From Haliotis rufescens (lineage: Eukaryota), in the NCBI RefSeq assembly GCF_023055435.1, contig NW_025963890.1, positions 48,112,001-48,176,000 on the forward strand: a DNA stretch of 64,000 bases. The letters run 5' to 3'. The notes beneath the pieces are model-generated. The model was not told where the DNA came from. It saw nothing but the letters and a program-made list of their open reading frames with translations, and searched no databases. Shown in pieces: positions 44,633 through 63,189 of the stretch (within the stretch, counting starts at the first letter, position 1; every line of letters starts with the position of its first letter). Made by a program: the position numbers and the translations under genes.

Positions 44633-47600
44633 GTTTCTGATTGATTCTGTACACCGATGTCAATAGCCAAAATGAAATTGACAATCGTTTTTCTCGTTTT
44701 TTATGCTGGAATGTTCATGGGTTGTTTAGTAAGCTGTCAAATGACAACTTTAATTCGTATTTGGAAACATTTGACGTTATTTGTTTATTTGAAACATTTC
44801 TTGACTCAGTCGACTTCGATTGGTTACCTGGATTTAAAGTCTTCTACTCCCCGGCGGTAAAGCTGTCCGGTCGTGGGAGAAAATGTGGTGGTGTTTGTTT
44901 TGCCATTAGAAATGAGTTTGCTCAGTTTTGTAATGTATTTAATAGTAATTCCGGTATTGATAATTTCTTGTCAATTATATTGAAGAAAAACCTCTTTGGA
45001 ACGCCTAAAGGTGTATTGTTTTGCCCCTTGTACATACCACCAGAAAACTCTACATACTATGACAAACATCAAAATATTAACATACATGATAAATTCGATG
45101 AATTCTTTCTTGATAGAGCAGACCGTCTCTCTGAATACACTGTGCTTCTTTGTGGAGATTTTAACTCTAGAACAGGTTGTGAAAATAATTTAGTTGATCA
45201 AGAATCGACCACAAATGATCCCGATATTTTCCCTGAAATTGACATTGTAGATGCATGTATATCTTGGCTTGACAATGTTATTAATAAGTTTGGACGATTT
45301 CTAATTAACTTCTGTTATGTTTTCAACTTGTTCATACTAAATGGCAGAGTTAATGGCGACATGAATGGTGAATATACATTCATTAGTGGTAATGGTAGTA
45401 GTACTATTGATTCTTTTATTGCCTCATCTGATTTCTACAAGTTTGTTTATAATCTTACAGTTGCCGAGAGTCTTGACTCGGACCACTGCCCTCTTGAACT
45501 GAGTTGTTCATTTCCACGAGAAAACACAAATAGATTTTCACAATCTAATAGCACTAACTCGGCAGGTAGATTTGTATGGAATGAATTGCATAGAGATGAA
45601 TTTGTACACTGTCTTAGTGATCGTTTGGCTGAAACTTCACAGACTCTTCTGACTACGCTAAACACTAACATAAACGATGCAGTTGATCTTTTTGTAAATC
45701 TACTACTTGAGTCAGGGCAGTGTATGAAAAAAACAGTTCTTGGAAATAAACCACGTAAATATACTTTCAATTTAAACAGCGAGTGTAGAGAACATAGGAG
45801 ATCAGCAAGACGAACGCTAAGAAAGTTCCGTAAAAATAGATCTGAATCTAATAGGAAAACTTATTGTCAGTTACGCAACAAATATAAAACAGAATGTAAA
45901 AGCTTTTTAAAATCCCTTAAACTAACCAAATTAAATCATCTAAATGCCTCATTATCAAACCAAAAACGGTTCTGGAGAGAAATTAATTCTCTACGCAGTC
46001 CATCATCTGTTCAGAATAATATCACAGGCACAGAGTGTCTGACTCATTTTAAGCATGTGTTTAGCAATGATCTTATATTCCATGATGTTATTGAACATGA
46101 GCATGACGATATTGCTGTTTATAACCCATCAGATGTTGAGTTTGACATTCTTGAGTCCGAAATAACAAGAAAGGAAATTCTCGATGCTATTGACTCACTT
46201 AAACCTGGAAAATCTCCAGGCCCTGACAATATCTTAGCGGATATGCTGAAGAGTTTCAAACACATAACTGTTCCATTTTTGCATTCTCTCTTTAACGACA
46301 TATTCAACAAAGGTATATTTCCGTCAACTTGGTCAAAATCTATCATTGTTCCTCTATTTAAGAAGGGTGATACAAGCGATCCTGATAATTATAGAGCAAT
46401 TTCATTGACAAGTATTTTAGGTAAAGTTTTTGCTATAGTTTTAAACAAGCGTTTAACGCTCTGGTCTAATGTTTATGATAATATTCCAGAAAATCAGGCA
46501 GGCTTCAGACGATCATATTCACCTATCGACCATATTTTTACACTTTATTCTATTGTACAAAAATATCTTGGATGCCGGGAACGAAAACTGTATGTTGCAT
46601 TTGTGGACTTCAAAAAAGCTTTTGATAGTGTTAATCGTTGTAAACTTTGGGATTGTTTGAGAAAAACGGGCGTTGGGGGTAAAATGTATAAAATGTTAAA
46701 ATCTATATATGCAAATGTCAAATAATGTGTTTGTCACAAAAATGGTGTCACTGATTACTTTGATTGCCCTATCGGTGTGAAACAAGGCTGCATTTTTAGC
46801 CCTCTCCTTTTCTCTTTCTTTATCAACGAATTGTCCCTTGAAATCCAACAAAACGGAAAACATGGTGTCCAACTTTATCCAGATATGTATGAATTGCTAA
46901 TATTACTTTTCGCAGACGATGTTATACTAATTTCTGATACTGTTAATGGGCTTCAAACACAAATAGACATATTGTTTCAGTATACTATCTCCTGGAAACT
47001 GACCGTTAATACAGATAAAACGAAAATTGTTGTTTTTAGAAAGGGGGGTCCTCTTGCATCCAGGGAAAAATGGTATATAAATGGGCAACAAATTAATGTT
47101 GAAAAAACTTATAAATACCTTGGTGTCATTTTTCCTTTTAATCTGAAACTAAATCACCTCGTCAACGATATTGCGCTACGAGCTAAGAGAGCCCTCATTA
47201 CTTTATTTGTTGTTCTTGATAAACTCCATGTGTCTTCCCCGTCTGTTTTCTTCAAACTTTTTGATTCTCAAGTTAAACCAATTCTGTTATATGGTTCAGA
47301 GATTTGAGGTCTCGAGAAATATCACATCTTGGAAAAAATTCACTTAACTGCATGTAAACGATTCTTAAATGTTGCCAAATCTACCCCAAATTGTATGGTG
47401 TATGGTGAATGTGGAAGACATCCCTTATATATCTGTTCTTATGTACGCGGTCTAAAATATTGATTAAAAATTACAGAAATGTCACCTCATCGTATTCCAC
47501 GTAAATGTTATGAAATGCTGAAATACCGCGACAATGTTGGTTATATAACATGGGTCACTAAAATCAGACAACTTTTATTTCTTCATGGATTTGGATATGT

Positions 47601-52687: not shown

Positions 52688-52853
52688 GTGAGTGAGTGTG
52701 TATGGTTTTACGCCGCTTTTAGCATTATTCCAGCAATATCATGGCAGGTGACACCGGGAATGGGCTTCACACATTGTACCCATGTCGGGAATCGAACCCG
52801 GGTCTTCGGCGTGACAAGCGAACGCTTTAACCACTAGGTTACCCGACTGCCTC
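52688..52853 (-). mobile_element. SINE family A
   Basis: TSD gacttcaaacaga. Confidence 0.85.
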
Positions 52854-53105
52854 CGACTTCAAACAGAAGAAACACCAATGCCGTTAGATGATGACATGCA
52901 GTCAGCCACATCATAGAGCTCATCTGACAAACCAAAGCATTGTCCAGCATGCAACAAACGAGGGGGAATCCATCGTAGTATTTCTTCTTTGTTTAATGAT
53001 GCATTCAGCAATATTCCAGATGTCACTGCAGCCTTAATCTATCACACAGTCCCTTGACCATATTATTTTCCAGCCCTTACTGAAATGCCATAGCCCTAAA
53101 CAAAG

Positions 53106-53533
53106 TGTAGCAGGGCGTGGAGTCATCCTACAGATGACATCCTTACCTTGTCAGCTTGCTGACAGGGTTAACCTCTTTGCTCATGTGGACAAGACGTTCG
53201 ACCTCGGATCAGAAGGTCCATGGTTCAAATCCCATCACGGACTCGAAAATTTTGTTGGCCGCTACATTGGCGCCCAACGTGGGGCTGAGCACGTTCATAT
53301 TATATTTGAGCAAAATAAGCCTCAGTACCCTACAATGCGGCCCGGGGCGTGCCTTCTGTTGACGGGGGAGTATGTAGCAGGGCGTGGAGTCATCCTACAG
53401 ATGACATCCTTACCTTGTCAGCTTGCTGACGGGGGTAACCTCTTTGGTCATATGGACAAGGTGTCTGGCCTCGGATCAGAAGGTCTGTGGTTCGAATCCA
53501 ATCACAGGACTCGGAAATTTTATCGCCGCTACA
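53106..53533 (+). mobile_element. Miniature non-autonomous LTR retrotransposon (TRIM) with tRNA-derived LTRs
   Basis: Two 161-bp LTRs, TGTAGC...GCTACA (53106-53266, 53373-53533). PBS TGGCGCCCAACGTGGGGC at 53268-53285 (tRNA-Lys CTT 3' end). PPT GGGGGAG at 53364-53370. 4-bp TSD AAAG. Each LTR contains a tRNA-Arg(TCG)-like sequence. Confidence 0.9.
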
Positions 53534-54466
53534 AAAGCAAGTCTACATGTTCCACAGGTTCATCTCACTGGCACTCCTTTTCAATTTAAATGTAGCTGAT
53601 TGGTATTAGCATATATTTTCAGAGACTAAGTGTGAGTCTACTGCAGCCTGTAAGTAATTGAGTCTGTCCAGACATTAATATCATGAGCATCAATCCACAC
53701 AATTGGGATCGATGACATGCATCAACCAAGTCAGCGAGTCTGACCACTCGATCCCGTTAGTCGCCTCTTACGACAAGCATGGGTTGCTGAAGACCTATGA
53801 TCCAGTCTGTGAAGATCCGGGGTAGAATAGGGCTTCAACAACTCATGTTTGCTGTAAAAGGTGACTATGCTTGTCGTAAGAAACTAACGGGATCGGGTGG
53901 TTAGGTTCGCTGACTTGGTTGATACATGTCAATGTATCCCAATTGTGTAGATCGATGCTCATGATATTAACCACTGGATTGTCTGGACATGATTATTTAC
54001 AGACTGCCATCTTATAGCTGGAATATTGCTGAGTGCAGTGTTAAACAACAAAACAAACTGTCCTGAGACCCCCTTTTATACATGACAAGTCCTATATGAC
54101 AAGCATAGGTTACTAGGCACCTATTCTCCCCTCGGGACCTAGGACAACAAACAGCGACTATTCCGAGTCGCATTAATATTGAGTTGCATTTTTTGCTAGG
54201 GGTCAGTAGTCACATTTATTTGGAGACGCATTAATTTCAAGATTTACAGTAGACATTTCTTATTTTATTTACATTGTAATAAAGAATGTTATGCATGCAC
54301 ACACCAAACCAGATACAGATCTGTACCACATCTTGGCCACCTGTTGGCTAAAAGTGCTGAGCTTGCTGTGCAAACCACCACCAGAGTCAGATCAGACCCT
54401 GGATTCCCTCCCAGGTAATAACAATACCTTCACAGTGTAGTATTTATACCAGCAACAAACAAGAAA

Positions 54467-54818
54467 AGGTGAGGTGAAATTGGGTTTAACGTCGCGTCCA
54501 AGATAATTGCACTTATATAGCGACGTGCATGTACGTGTGTGTTTGTGTGGCTGCTTGTACTAGTCCGGACTGATGCCGATTTATAGTACTAGCCCACTGA
54601 GATACCATGCCACAGTTTAACATGAATATCCCACTCAGACACAGTATACTGACTCCGAGCCAACCAGTCCTTGTTTTAGCCCCTTAATGCCGAGCGCCAG
54701 ACAGGGTAACAACAAGTACCATCTTTAAACGTCTTTTGGTATGACGCGGCCGGGGATCGAACCCCGGACCTTCCGCTCACCAGGCGGACGCTCTACCACT
54801 AGTCCACGGAGGCGGTCT
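54467..54818 (-). mobile_element. SINE family D
   Basis: Full length; TSD caaacaagaaaag. Confidence 0.8.
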
Positions 54819-61856: not shown

Positions 61857-62678
61857 TTATTCTTCCTTGTTCTTAACACCTTGAAGGAAAAATCGACAGA
61901 TAAAGGTTGTCCACAACGACAGTACTGCACACAAACTGAGTACAAACCGTAGTCCCTTGAACCATGGTGGGTACCCAGGCACTACAGTGTCGAAATATGC
62001 AGACCCTGCAATACCAGCCATCACAGTGAACACAGACACAGGGTCTGGGAGGAGAAGTCCCGCCCACGCCACCAGAGAGGGGGTGACGCTGTAGCCCAAA
62101 TTGAACCAGTCAGGTTTATGATAGCTCTCTTCAGGTACCACAAACCCCCATCGCACCCCTCCGAGAAAAGACAGAATGACAGCGCCATAGGCCAGCTGAG
62201 CAAAAGCAATCTGTGGCATGTACAGTTGTGACATGGTCATATACACTGGTGCTGACACAAAGGGAATTAAACCAGAAAATCCAAGAACTAAGGCCGGGAC
62301 TGGGGATGATCTTAGTTCTTTTAAATTTGTCCACACGGTGAGAGCGCGGGTTTCTCTGTCTTCTGAAATGAATCGTTTCTGGATGCCAATTTCATGTGAT
62401 TGTGTGTGCACACGGCTCCATGCTGGAACACAGAATGTAGACAAAAGGAATACACTTCTGTTGCAGAAAACAGCATTATTGTGTTGAAAACTCTTCAATC
62501 TTTGACAGTGTTGAAACACATTTGTGTGATGTGTGGACAGTGTTCTTGAAGCATATTCTGGGTCTGCTCTAACCAATCCATGAAAACGTCTTGCTGCTAT
62601 ATATCTGCAGCAGGCTAACTGTGTGACAGCAGGGAGTTCCCGGGAAGCTCTTTGTAAAGATGTCAACAGGAGTTTCAT
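61857..62678 (-). CDS. TMEM69: Transmembrane protein 69 (DUF3429), 273 aa, single coding exon
   Basis: Acceptor ttttcag at 62711, ATG at 62678. SPVPALVLGFSGLIPF, QLAYGAVILSFLGGVRWG, PDWFNLGYSVTPSLVAW, YPPWFKGLRFVLS. Basic N-terminus resembling a mitochondrial presequence. Confidence 0.92.
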   Translation of the reverse strand: MKLLLTSLQRASRELPAVTQLACCRYIAARRFHGLVRADPEYASRTLSTHHTNVFQHCQRLKSFQHNNAVFCNRSVFLLSTFCVPAWSRVHTQSHEIGIQKRFISEDRETRALTVWTNLKELRSSPVPALVLGFSGLIPFVSAPVYMTMSQLYMPQIAFAQLAYGAVILSFLGGVRWGFVVPEESYHKPDWFNLGYSVTPSLVAWAGLLLPDPVSVFTVMAGIAGSAYFDTVVPGYPPWFKGLRFVLSLCAVLSLWTTFICRFFLQGVKNKEE

Positions 62679-63189
62679 GATTGGTTGTATATGTAGGAAC
62701 AGTTTCTTCCCTGAAAATTTGAGACAGGCATTAAATAACAATATTTGCATACATACCCAATGAAAGCCAGTAAGATGAATGCATGTACCAGAAAATGTAT
62801 GAAATAGCATTACTCTTCATAAACTTATTTGCTTGATTGTATAATACCAATTGTTTCAATGGTGGTTTTTTTTATCTATTCTTGCTAACAGTTTCCAAAT
62901 TATCTTTACTTACTAATATTAATTTTATTATATGCTATCTGCTATTCTTTGTTACGTAAAAATCAATAGTTCTAGCTGCCTTACAGGCTCCACATAGTAA
63001 GTGCAAATTTGAATGAAGATGAAACTTCACATGGCGAAGTTGCACTGCAATGACAATGCATTGATTACAGTTAGAAATGTTACACACGAAATAATTAAAT
63101 GATATCATTCAATGCAGTCTTTACTGAAAGTGACAGGCCTATAAATAAGATATAACTTTCAACAACCTTGCCGAGGACTACCTCTCGGG

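What the first reader, a model, noticed from the sequence alone, without database searches (positions are those of the whole stretch)
53106..53533. Complete 428-bp miniature LTR retrotransposon whose LTRs carry a tRNA-Arg-derived Pol III promoter
Seen directly: two 161-bp LTRs with TG...CA ends and 6-bp terminal inverted repeats; an 18-nt PBS matching the 3' end of tRNA-Lys(CTT); a PPT; a 106-bp non-coding interior; and a 4-bp TSD (AAAG). Each LTR contains TGGTCATATGGACAAGGTGTCTGGCCTCGGATCAGAAGGTCTGTGGTTCGAATCC or a variant, which aligns with tRNA-Arg(TCG) (TGGCCTAATGGATAAGGCGTCTGACTTCGGATCAGAAG...GGTTCGAGTCC), including A and B boxes. Inference: a SINE/LTR hybrid parasite, transcribed by Pol III but primed and integrated by a Gypsy-type machinery (4-bp TSD). 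It parallels plant Cassandra TRIMs (5S in the LTR) and, from memory and to be verified, the tRNA-LTR 'Helenus' group. Such elements are rarely described and this family may be unannotated in this lineage.
Basis: partly seen in the sequence, partly recalled or inferred. Interest (0 to 1): 0.85.

Follow-up and report, generated by a model that had tools for sequence, protein, structure and literature searches.

The report
Abalone mini LTR retrotransposon with tRNA-like LTRs
This is an old copy of a 428-bp non-coding LTR retrotransposon, abundant and recently active in an abalone genome, whose repeats carry a relic of a tRNA-Arg gene; it is a new family, in a new host class, of the "Helenus" type described in 2024.

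Summary
There are two 161-bp LTRs with TGTAGC...GCTACA ends, an 18-nt PBS, a PPT, a 106-bp non-coding interior and an AAAG target-site duplication.

The family is real and mobile.
- 31 of 32 other full copies have perfect 4-bp duplications.
- Most copies are about 98% alike, and many have identical LTRs.
- The genome holds about 1,570 LTR cores and about 580 LTR/PBS junctions, plus 267-bp tandem arrays.
- The window copy is old: its LTRs are 89% alike.

LTR positions about 73-127 align to this genome's own tRNA-Arg(TCG) gene (z about 15). The A-like and B boxes are kept, and a single T4 run sits where a tRNA terminator would be. The tRNA covariance model and ARAGORN find no tRNA, so this is a promoter relic, not a gene.

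The host is a Haliotis species. A Ty3/Gypsy family shares the 6-bp termini, the PBS and the PPT type. Two chimeric Gypsy/TRIM insertions with 4-bp duplications indicate that both pass through the same reverse-transcription and integration machinery.

The element fits Kojima's Helenus/TRIMp3 group. That paper lists no gastropod, and motif searches found no tRNA-Arg-type family in its sequence file. Pol III transcription remains an inference; small-RNA reads gave nothing.

First-stage readers flagged miniature LTR elements with tRNA-like LTRs in at least eight other windows of this genome.

The parts
53102..53105 (+). Left copy of the 4-bp target-site duplication (AAAG)
   Evidence: Read directly. 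31 of 32 other copies have perfect 4-bp duplications.
53106..53266 (+). 5' LTR, 161 bp, ends TGTAGC...GCTACA
   Evidence: It shares 144 of 162 aligned columns with the 3' LTR.
53178..53232 (+). tRNA-Arg(TCG)-derived segment of the 5' LTR. The A-box-like motif is at 53178-53188. The B box at 53222-53232 is decayed to GGTTCAAATCC.
   Evidence: Local alignment to the genome's own tRNA-Arg gene (L034:1472-1546, minus strand) gives z = 9. blastn hit at 53187-53215.
53250..53253 (+). T4 run, the only sense-strand run of four or more T in the 5' half. Inferred weak Pol III terminator and R/U5 boundary.
   Evidence: Present within the last 30 nt in 64 of 66 LTRs, at LTR position 146 in most copies. 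There is no other sense-strand run of four or more T in the element.
53268..53285 (+). Primer-binding site, 18 nt, complementary to the tRNA-Lys(CTT)-type 3' end plus CCA
   Evidence: It is identical to the PBS of the candidate partner Gypsy family.
53267..53372 (+). Non-coding interior, 106 bp (spacer T, PBS, 75 bp, PPT)
   Evidence: 97% identical to the interior of young copies. It is too short to hold gag or pol.
53361..53372 (+). Polypurine tract region (GACGGGGGAGTA), directly before the 3' LTR
   Evidence: The Gypsy partner has the same type of tract, ending GGGGGTGTA.
53373..53533 (+). 3' LTR, 161 bp
53445..53499 (+). tRNA-Arg(TCG)-derived segment of the 3' LTR. The A-box-like motif TGGTCATATGG is at 53445-53455. 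The anticodon-arm relic still contains TCG. The B box GGTTCGAATCC is at 53489-53499.
   Evidence: Alignment to the genome's tRNA-Arg gene gives z = 15.8. blastn hit at 53454-53498.
53518..53521 (+). T4 run of the 3' LTR. Inferred 3' end of the replicative transcript.
53534..53537 (+). Right copy of the target-site duplication (AAAG)

Best explanation
Window 53106-53533 is an old, decayed copy of a high-copy, recently active terminal-repeat retrotransposon in miniature (TRIM) of an abalone (Haliotis) genome. It belongs to the Helenus/TRIMp3 kind.

Shown:
- It has the full LTR-PBS-interior-PPT-LTR anatomy, with no coding capacity.
- It integrates with 4-bp duplications, preferentially at ATG-NNNN-CA sites.
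- Its LTRs carry a segment homologous to the host's tRNA-Arg(TCG) gene, from the D loop to the T loop. The acceptor stem and the tRNA fold are lost.
- A Ty3/Gypsy family with RT followed by integrase shares its six terminal bases at both LTR ends, the 18-20 nt tRNA-Lys PBS and the PPT type.
- Two complete integration events are Gypsy/TRIM chimeras joined at the PBS.

Inferred:
- TRIM RNA is co-packaged with Gypsy RNA, reverse-transcribed from a tRNA-Lys primer and inserted by the Gypsy integrase.
- The tRNA relic works as an internal A/B-box Pol III promoter. Transcription would start about LTR position 60-66 in the 5' LTR. It would have to read through the weak T4 at LTR position 146-149 and stop at the same T4 in the 3' LTR. 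That gives U3 of about 60 nt, R of about 85 nt and U5 of 12 nt.
- The module was probably captured from a tRNA-Arg-headed SINE or a tRNA gene.
For: - Anatomy.
- Family size: 1,936 first-look candidates; 1,569 LTR-core and 584 LTR/PBS-junction matches at up to 2 mismatches.
- Duplications: 31 of 32 copies.
- Youth of the family: copies are 97-98% alike, 12 of 33 have identical LTRs, and the window copy is 92% like the others with LTRs 89% alike.
- Arrays of 267-bp period at C112:51216461-51220626 and on C583.
- tRNA-Arg homology: z = 13-16 in young copies, with none of 2,000 shuffles as high. Related LTR variants contain a 19-nt exact match to the tRNA-Arg anticodon arm.
- Motifs: exact B box in 59 of 66 LTRs, exact A-like box in 57 of 66, T4 in 64 of 66. 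This is the only sense-strand run of four or more T. There is no TATAAA or AATAAA.
- The genuine tRNA-Arg gene ends 2 nt before a T7 run. The LTR's T4 lies about 7 nt after where the tRNA body would end.
- Partner: L082 has an 852-bp LTR with TGTAGC...GCTACA ends, the same PBS, and RVT_1, Integrase_H2C2 and rve domains in that order. There are 26 such LTR/PBS junctions and about 16 copies 96% identical to L082's RT-integrase region.
- Chimeras: L094 has duplication CACA and L088 has CATT.
- Host: TMEM69-like protein 95% identical to Haliotis cracherodii.
- Kind: Kojima 2024 defines Helenus, and animal Helenus make 4-bp duplications and pair with Gypsy.
Against: - Rfam's tRNA model (E up to 10) and ARAGORN find no tRNA in the LTRs of the window copy or of the 10 to 13 other copies each tool scanned.
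- The segment does not fold better than shuffles (z = -1.7).
- Two size-fractionated small-RNA runs of the same species laid no read on the element. This is a weak negative, because such libraries select about 20-30 nt RNAs, and one run may not have been a valid test.
- A T4 inside the 5' LTR would stop many Pol III transcripts after about 85 nt, before the PBS.
- Motif conservation among copies about 98% identical carries almost no information about selection.
- No similarity to the Gypsy element was found outside the termini, PBS and PPT.
Confidence: 0.8

Rival explanations
1. It is an ordinary Pol II-transcribed TRIM, and the tRNA-Arg-like segment is a passive relic of an old SINE or tRNA insertion into the LTR with no promoter role.
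For: - No tRNA covariance match or fold.
- No small-RNA reads.
- The T4 in the 5' LTR would terminate Pol III early.
- Conservation among young copies does not show selection.
- The partner Gypsy LTR is 852 bp, long enough for an ordinary promoter.
Against: - The LTR has no TATAAA and no AATAAA; the only ATTAAA is in the interior.
- The B box is a perfect GGTTCGAATCC in 59 of 66 LTRs.
- The single T run sits where a tRNA terminator would.
- There is no other T4 between the putative start and the 3' LTR terminator.
- The element's length fits Pol III products, as argued for the whole Helenus group.
Confidence: 0.17
2. The resemblance to tRNA-Arg is chance, or the segment is a later SINE insertion present only in this copy.
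For: The tRNA covariance model and ARAGORN are negative.
Against: - None of 2,000 shuffles reach the alignment score (z up to 15.8).
- Both LTRs of all 33 full copies analysed carry the segment.
- 1,569 genome matches to a 26-mer that spans the B box and its LTR-specific downstream sequence.
Confidence: 0.01
3. It is a 267-bp satellite unit, not a mobile element. The apparent LTRs would be two neighbouring repeats of a short array.
For: - Arrays of 267-bp period exist.
- The first part of the LTR is also amplified in arrays with 49- and 98-bp spacing.
Against: - 31 of 32 dispersed two-LTR copies on many contigs have different, perfect 4-bp duplications and a shared target motif.
- A PBS and PPT sit at the canonical places.
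- Arrays are a known by-product of TRIMs (LTR-11_DR).
Confidence: 0.01
4. The LTRs spread functional tRNA-Arg genes, so the element is a vehicle that expands the tRNA pool.
For: Kojima found a few bivalve and fungal Helenus families predicted to encode a tRNA.
Against: - There is no acceptor stem.
- Position 33 is C instead of U, and the anticodon stem has a mismatch in young copies (sequence).
- No covariance-model hit.
Confidence: 0.01

Closest known systems
Helenus (TRIMp3) non-autonomous LTR retrotransposons, Kojima 2024 (PMC10886601). Examples are the scallop families Helenus-2_ArIr (LTR 160, interior 105, total 425 bp) and Helenus-3_MiYe.
   Same: - TRIM with a tRNA-like A/B-box segment in each LTR.
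- tRNA-3'-end PBS (Lys is one of the bivalve types), and a PPT ending ...GGGGGAGTA as in several listed families.
- TG...CA ends and 4-bp duplications.
- Gypsy-type partner, tandem arrays and solo LTRs.
- Similar size (161/106/428 bp).
   Different: - The host is a vetigastropod. The paper's molluscan hosts are all pteriomorph bivalves, and the words 'gastropod' and 'Haliotis' do not occur in it.
- The relic is tRNA-Arg(TCG)-like, with A box TGGTCATGTGG. The listed LTRs that I saw have the TAGCTCAGT-GGTAGAGC type.
- Motif searches of DataS1 found no 'ggatcagaag' and no LTR starting 'tgtagcagggcg'. Line breaks in the file make this test imperfect.
- Here the partner is supported by shared LTR termini and by chimeric insertions, not only by PBS similarity.
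Cassandra (plant TRIM with a 5S rRNA gene in the LTR) and Ajax (nemertean TRIM with a 5S promoter)
   Same: A Pol III-type small-RNA gene relic, with promoter and terminator, lies inside each LTR of a TRIM. The proposed transcript runs from the relic in the 5' LTR to the terminator in the 3' LTR.
   Different: - They carry 5S rather than tRNA.
- They make 5-bp duplications.
- They occur in plants or nemerteans.
- Cassandra transcription has been shown experimentally; here it has not.
MESC-type SINEs of gastropods and bivalves, including Haliotis, whose heads derive from tRNA-Arg (Matetovici et al. 2016, PMC4758252)
   Same: A tRNA-Arg-derived Pol III head is present in the same lineage. This makes them a plausible donor of the LTR module under Kojima's model of a SINE inserting into a TRIM LTR.
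   Different: - SINEs have no LTRs, PBS or PPT, and end in simple repeats.
- I did not compare sequences, so donor status is only a lead.
- No independent tRNA-Arg-headed SINE occurs in this window.
biv-TRIM of bivalves (Satovic et al. 2019, PMC6934838)
   Same: A small animal TRIM that forms tandem arrays in molluscs.
   Different: biv-TRIM has no canonical PBS, and no Pol III relic is reported for it.

Membership tests
Helenus / TRIMp3 (Kojima 2024) | TRIM anatomy: two short LTRs flanking a short non-coding interior that starts with a PBS and ends with a PPT | tested here: met
   LTRs of 161 bp, a 106-bp interior, an 18-nt PBS one base after the LTR, and a PPT abutting the 3' LTR.
Helenus / TRIMp3 (Kojima 2024) | tRNA-derived sequence in the LTR with box A (TRGCY...YGG) and box B (GGTTC) | tested here: met
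   Alignment to the host tRNA-Arg(TCG) gene gives z = 13-16. The B box is GGTTCGAATCC. The A box is TGGTC...TGG, one base off TRGCY.
Helenus / TRIMp3 (Kojima 2024) | Animal members generate 4-bp target-site duplications | tested here: met
   31 of 32 copies, plus the window copy.
Helenus / TRIMp3 (Kojima 2024) | Animal members pair with Gypsy-superfamily elements through a similar PBS region | tested here: met
   A Gypsy family has an identical PBS of 18-20 nt and the same 6-bp LTR termini, with RT followed by integrase. Chimeric insertions L094 and L088.
Helenus / TRIMp3 (Kojima 2024) | Transcription by RNA polymerase III from the LTR relic. The paper proposes this for the group but does not show it for Helenus. 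| tested here: inconclusive
   Motifs and T4 position fit. Small-RNA reads gave nothing, and the RNA status of the other runs is a guess.
Helenus / TRIMp3 (Kojima 2024) | Sequence identity with an already named Helenus family | tested here: not met
   No match to diagnostic motifs in the paper's DataS1, and no family of 161/106/428 bp in Table S1. It is therefore a new family, not a named one. Repbase and Dfam could not be searched.
tRNA gene (Rfam RF00005) | Cloverleaf scored by the covariance model at or above the gathering score | tested here: not met
   No hit in the LTRs at E up to 10, in the window copy and 10 other copies. ARAGORN was negative in 14 loci.
SINE (tRNA-headed, LINE-mobilised) | Single unit with a tRNA head, a LINE-derived or simple-repeat tail, and duplications of variable length | tested here: not met
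   Direct LTRs, a PBS, a PPT and a fixed 4-bp duplication; there is no A-rich or simple-repeat tail.
Cassandra / Ajax | 5S rRNA-derived sequence in the LTR and 5-bp duplications | tested here: not met
   The relic is tRNA-Arg-like and the duplication is 4 bp. There was no 5S hit in the Rfam scan.

The most novel reading that the evidence does not exclude
An independently born, Pol III-driven LTR retroelement lineage in gastropods. A tRNA-Arg head, perhaps from a MESC-type SINE, was captured into a TRIM LTR together with its terminator, which now defines the R/U5 border. The element parasitises an identified Ty3/Gypsy family, and the chimeras joined at the PBS record co-packaging. This would give the first Helenus-type element with a concrete autonomous partner, and a testable case of how a leaky Pol III terminator is tolerated in an LTR life cycle.
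Probability: 0.45. Interest if true: 0.6.

Novelty: new member of a known kind. Interest (0 to 1): 0.45.

Why it matters
Helenus-type elements were named only in 2024, and none has been shown to be transcribed by Pol III or tied to a specific helper.

This abalone family extends the group to gastropods and to a tRNA-Arg relic. It is young and abundant enough to be studied experimentally. It also comes with a candidate helper family and natural recombinants that point to shared particles.

Practically, about 1,600 tRNA-like LTRs can confuse tRNA, SINE and repeat annotation of abalone genomes. Young, possibly polymorphic insertions could serve as markers in these fishery and conservation species.

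Tried and rejected
- **tRNA detection in the LTRs:** Rfam cmscan at E up to 10 and ARAGORN were negative. RNA folding of the segment gave z = -1.7, so there is no tRNA-like fold.
- **First partner candidates:** two non-TRIM loci with the same PBS (L060 and L062, extended as L064 and L065) have no long open frames downstream and were dropped.
- **Reciprocal recombinant:** a pattern for the TRIM LTR joined to the leader of the 96% Gypsy family found nothing in the genome at up to 1 mismatch.
- **Expression:** the small-RNA runs X21 and X22 laid 0 and 5 reads, none on the element. The tool notes that a run with 0 laid is no test unless the organism is shown to be in it. Contigs of runs X9 and X19 show only that the family is abundant in two other coded organisms. 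Their RNA status is a guess, and contig ends say nothing about transcript ends.
- **Orthology in another species:** one X9 contig crosses the 3' LTR/flank border with only 25 nt inside the LTR. That is below the tool's 31-nt rule, so I make no claim.
- **A tRNA-less ancestral LTR:** the first part of the LTR is 2.5 times more frequent than the B-box part. This is at least partly due to arrays with 49- and 98-bp spacing derived from it, so no conclusion follows.
- **More Gypsy copies and their 3' ends:** The tRNA-Lys array could not be cut out either.
- **Mitochondrial COX1 for host identification:** not present in the assembly.
- **Per-column majority state:** inside one script I used the majority state of the 428-bp non-coding element, only to count CpG changes in the window copy. 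It was neither printed nor saved.

Full report
**Observation**

- Two 161-bp direct repeats lie at 53106-53266 and 53373-53533. They share 144 of 162 aligned columns, and both begin TGTAGC and end GCTACA.
- One T follows the 5' repeat.
- The 18-nt TGGCGCCCAACGTGGGGC follows at 53268-53285.
- The interior (53267-53372, 106 bp) ends in GACGGGGGAGTA, directly before the 3' repeat.
- AAAG flanks both sides, at 53102-53105 and 53534-53537.
- The quoted tRNA-like string is at 53445-53499.

**Is it a mobile family?**

Yes.
- The window's own genome is 1.33 Gb in 615 contigs. A search with the element gave 1,936 first-look candidates, and 60 scored full-length matches at 92-94% identity.
- I extracted 33 dispersed two-LTR copies. 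Of the 32 with both flanks, 31 have a perfect 4-bp duplication, different at each site.
- The other copies are 97-98% identical to each other, and 12 of 33 have identical LTRs. The window copy is only 92% like them, with 89% LTR identity. The family was therefore active recently, and the window copy is an old member.
- Eight of the window copy's 31 differences from the majority state are CpG transitions. It carries CCTACAG where the young copies have CCCACAG.
- Exact-pattern counts at up to 2 mismatches give 1,569 LTR cores and 584 LTR/PBS junctions. There are more LTRs than two per junction, so solo or fragmentary LTRs exist.
- Arrays of 267-bp period (LTR plus interior) occur, for example at C112:51216461-51220626.
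- The pre-integration sites show a marked preference. A, T and G occupy the three bases before the duplication in 24, 26 and 21 of 31 sites. C/G then A follow it, giving roughly ATG-NNNN-CA(W).

**The tRNA-like part**

Rfam's tRNA model found nothing in the LTRs at E up to 10, in the window copy or in ten young copies. ARAGORN found nothing in 14 loci.

The genome's genuine tRNA-Arg(TCG) gene settles the question of descent.
- I found the gene with a pattern search (L034:1472-1546, minus strand).
- LTR positions 81-126 align to tRNA positions 17-62, from the D loop through the anticodon arm (with TCG retained) to the T loop.
- Scores are 13-16 standard deviations above shuffles in young copies. 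In the window copy, z is 15.8 for the 3' LTR and 9 for the 5' LTR. None of 2,000 shuffles came close.
- Related LTR variants elsewhere match the tRNA anticodon arm exactly over 19 nt.
- There is no acceptor stem, and no fold beyond chance (z = -1.7).

So the segment is a tRNA-Arg relic that keeps the internal promoter motifs.
- The A-like box TGGTCATGTGG sits at LTR 73-83 and is exact in 57 of 66 LTRs.
- A perfect B box GGTTCGAATCC sits at LTR 117-127 and is exact in 59 of 66.
- One T4 run sits at LTR 146-149 and is present in 64 of 66.
- That T4 is the only sense-strand run of four or more T in the whole element. It lies about 7 nt after where the tRNA body would end.
- The real gene is followed by T7 after 2 nt.
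- The element has no TATAAA or AATAAA.

**Host**

A single-exon TMEM69-like gene in the window (61857-62810, minus strand) is 95% identical to the Haliotis cracherodii protein and 78% identical to the H. asinina protein. The genome is therefore an abalone, close to but not identical with H. cracherodii.

**Helper element**

Patterns for the same PBS in a non-TRIM context led to a Ty3/Gypsy family.
- Copy L082 (C556:44903300-44913299) has an 852-bp LTR starting TGTAGG/TGTAGC and ending GGCTACA.
- It has a 3-nt spacer, the same PBS, and a PPT ending GGGGGTGTA.
- Its open frames, broken by stops, carry RVT_1, then Integrase_H2C2 and rve.
- Less decayed copies begin TGTAGCCGGGTG, against TGTAGCAGGGCG in the TRIM. 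They share 20 nt from the PBS start with the TRIM.
- The genome holds 26 such LTR/PBS junctions and about 16 copies 96% identical to L082's RT-integrase region. A second family at 75% identity is also present.
- No other LTR or leader similarity to the TRIM was found. This is as Kojima expected for a Pol III element with a Pol II helper.

Three loci are chimeras.
- **L094:** a Gypsy 5' LTR, the spacer AAA, the PBS, the TRIM interior and PPT, then a 49-nt palindromic stub made from the first bases of the TRIM LTR. The whole unit is flanked by CACA/CACA at an ATG-CACA-CAT site.
- **L088:** a Gypsy LTR, a single PBS and an inverted TRIM LTR, flanked by CATT/CATT.
- **L083:** part of a TRIM LTR plus the PBS, joined to the integrase C-terminal region of a Gypsy 74% related to L082.

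The joins lie at the PBS. That is the only homology the two elements share, and it guides plus-strand transfer. The two flanked chimeras are complete integrations. I infer that TRIM and Gypsy nucleic acids met inside the same particles and were inserted by the same integrase.

**Mechanism**

Shown: the anatomy, the mobility, the tRNA-Arg descent, the shared termini, PBS and PPT, and the chimeras.

Inferred:
- tRNA-Lys priming and Gypsy-encoded reverse transcription and integration.
- Pol III transcription from the relic, starting about LTR 60-66.
- Read-through of the weak T4 in the 5' LTR and termination at the T4 in the 3' LTR.
- This gives U3 of about 60 nt, R of about 85 nt and U5 of 12 nt, and a replicative RNA of about 350 nt.

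The early terminator is the weak point of the model. It parallels the retroviral problem of ignoring the 5' poly(A) signal. A bare T4 is a much shorter terminator than the T7 of the native gene.

Expression data did not help. Two small-RNA runs laid no read on the element. Contigs from two other coded organisms only show that the family is abundant there too.

**Comparison with what is known**

[quoted passage not shown] Animal members make 4-bp duplications and resemble Gypsy elements at the PBS. Pol III use is proposed, not shown.

All tested defining features are met here. The paper's molluscan hosts are pteriomorph bivalves only, and gastropods are not mentioned. Its Table S1 has no family of 161/106/428 bp. 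Its sequence file has no LTR with the Arg-type anticodon-arm motif or this LTR start; this was a motif search, limited by line breaks.

tRNA-Arg-headed SINEs (MESC) are known from Haliotis (PMC4758252) and are a possible donor of the module. I did not test this.

First-stage readers flagged miniature LTR elements with tRNA-like LTRs in at least eight other windows of this genome.

**Verdict**

The element is a new family and new host class of a recently described kind, not a new kind. The added value lies in three things: the tRNA-Arg origin tested against the host gene, the terminator geometry, and the identified Gypsy helper with recombinant insertions. Pol III transcription remains to be shown.

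Noticed in passing
L094 (G000:C45:295012-298036, reverse strand), about 654-1664 in oriented coordinates: A chimeric insertion: a Gypsy 5' LTR, the PBS, the TRIM interior and PPT, then a 49-nt palindromic stub of the TRIM LTR start. It is flanked by the duplication CACA. It looks like a snap-back product at the hairpin in the TRIM's U3 that was still integrated.
   Followed up: partly
L088 (G000:C24:24987288-24990312), about 661-1694: A Gypsy LTR and an inverted TRIM LTR face each other across a single, nearly palindromic tRNA-Lys PBS, flanked by the duplication CATT. One possible origin is two plus-strand strong-stop DNAs annealed through their PBS ends.
   Followed up: partly
G000:C79:3579314-3579780 and G000:C279:3663037-3664042: Tandem arrays with 49-, 98- and 147-bp spacing contain the first part of the TRIM LTR. 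This 26-mer occurs 3,939 times, against 1,569 for the B-box part, so a satellite seems to have grown from the LTR's 5' end.
   Followed up: no
Flanks of 31 TRIM copies (loci L002-L053): Strong integration-site preference: A, T and G in the three bases before the 4-bp duplication (24, 26 and 21 of 31 sites), then C/G-A after it. Roughly half of the Gypsy 5' flanks I could read show TG at the same place.
   Followed up: partly
G000:C79:12688373-12803913: The 3' end typical of tRNA-Lys(CTT) occurs 197 times, all on one strand, listed in a 297-bp tandem array. This is probably a large tRNA gene cluster and the likely source of the primer. The sequence could not be fetched.
   Followed up: no
window 53654-54000, with further partners at 52705-53019 and 54004-54048: Just right of the TRIM lies a long foldback, with arms at 53667-53761 and 53883-53978 that are 88-90% complementary. 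It is extremely abundant in the runs of the related organisms (word depth up to 1.6e7). A tRNA-like sequence (27.8 bits, minus strand) lies at 52777-52848. The TRIM sits in a patchwork of other repeats.
   Followed up: no
window 54743-54814 (minus strand): ARAGORN calls a tRNA-Thr(GGT). This is probably the head of a tRNA-derived SINE rather than a gene.
   Followed up: no
window 44641-46725 (plus strand): A 694-aa open frame with endonuclease and reverse-transcriptase domains, which is a LINE fragment.
   Followed up: no
L083 (G000:C334:41463000-41471000), 1-820 and 1897-2716: An 820-bp stretch is repeated at 100% identity, 1.9 kb apart. It ends in a Gypsy-like LTR end plus PBS. Part of a TRIM LTR and a Gypsy integrase tail lie between the repeats. 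This is a complex nested or recombinant structure.
   Followed up: no
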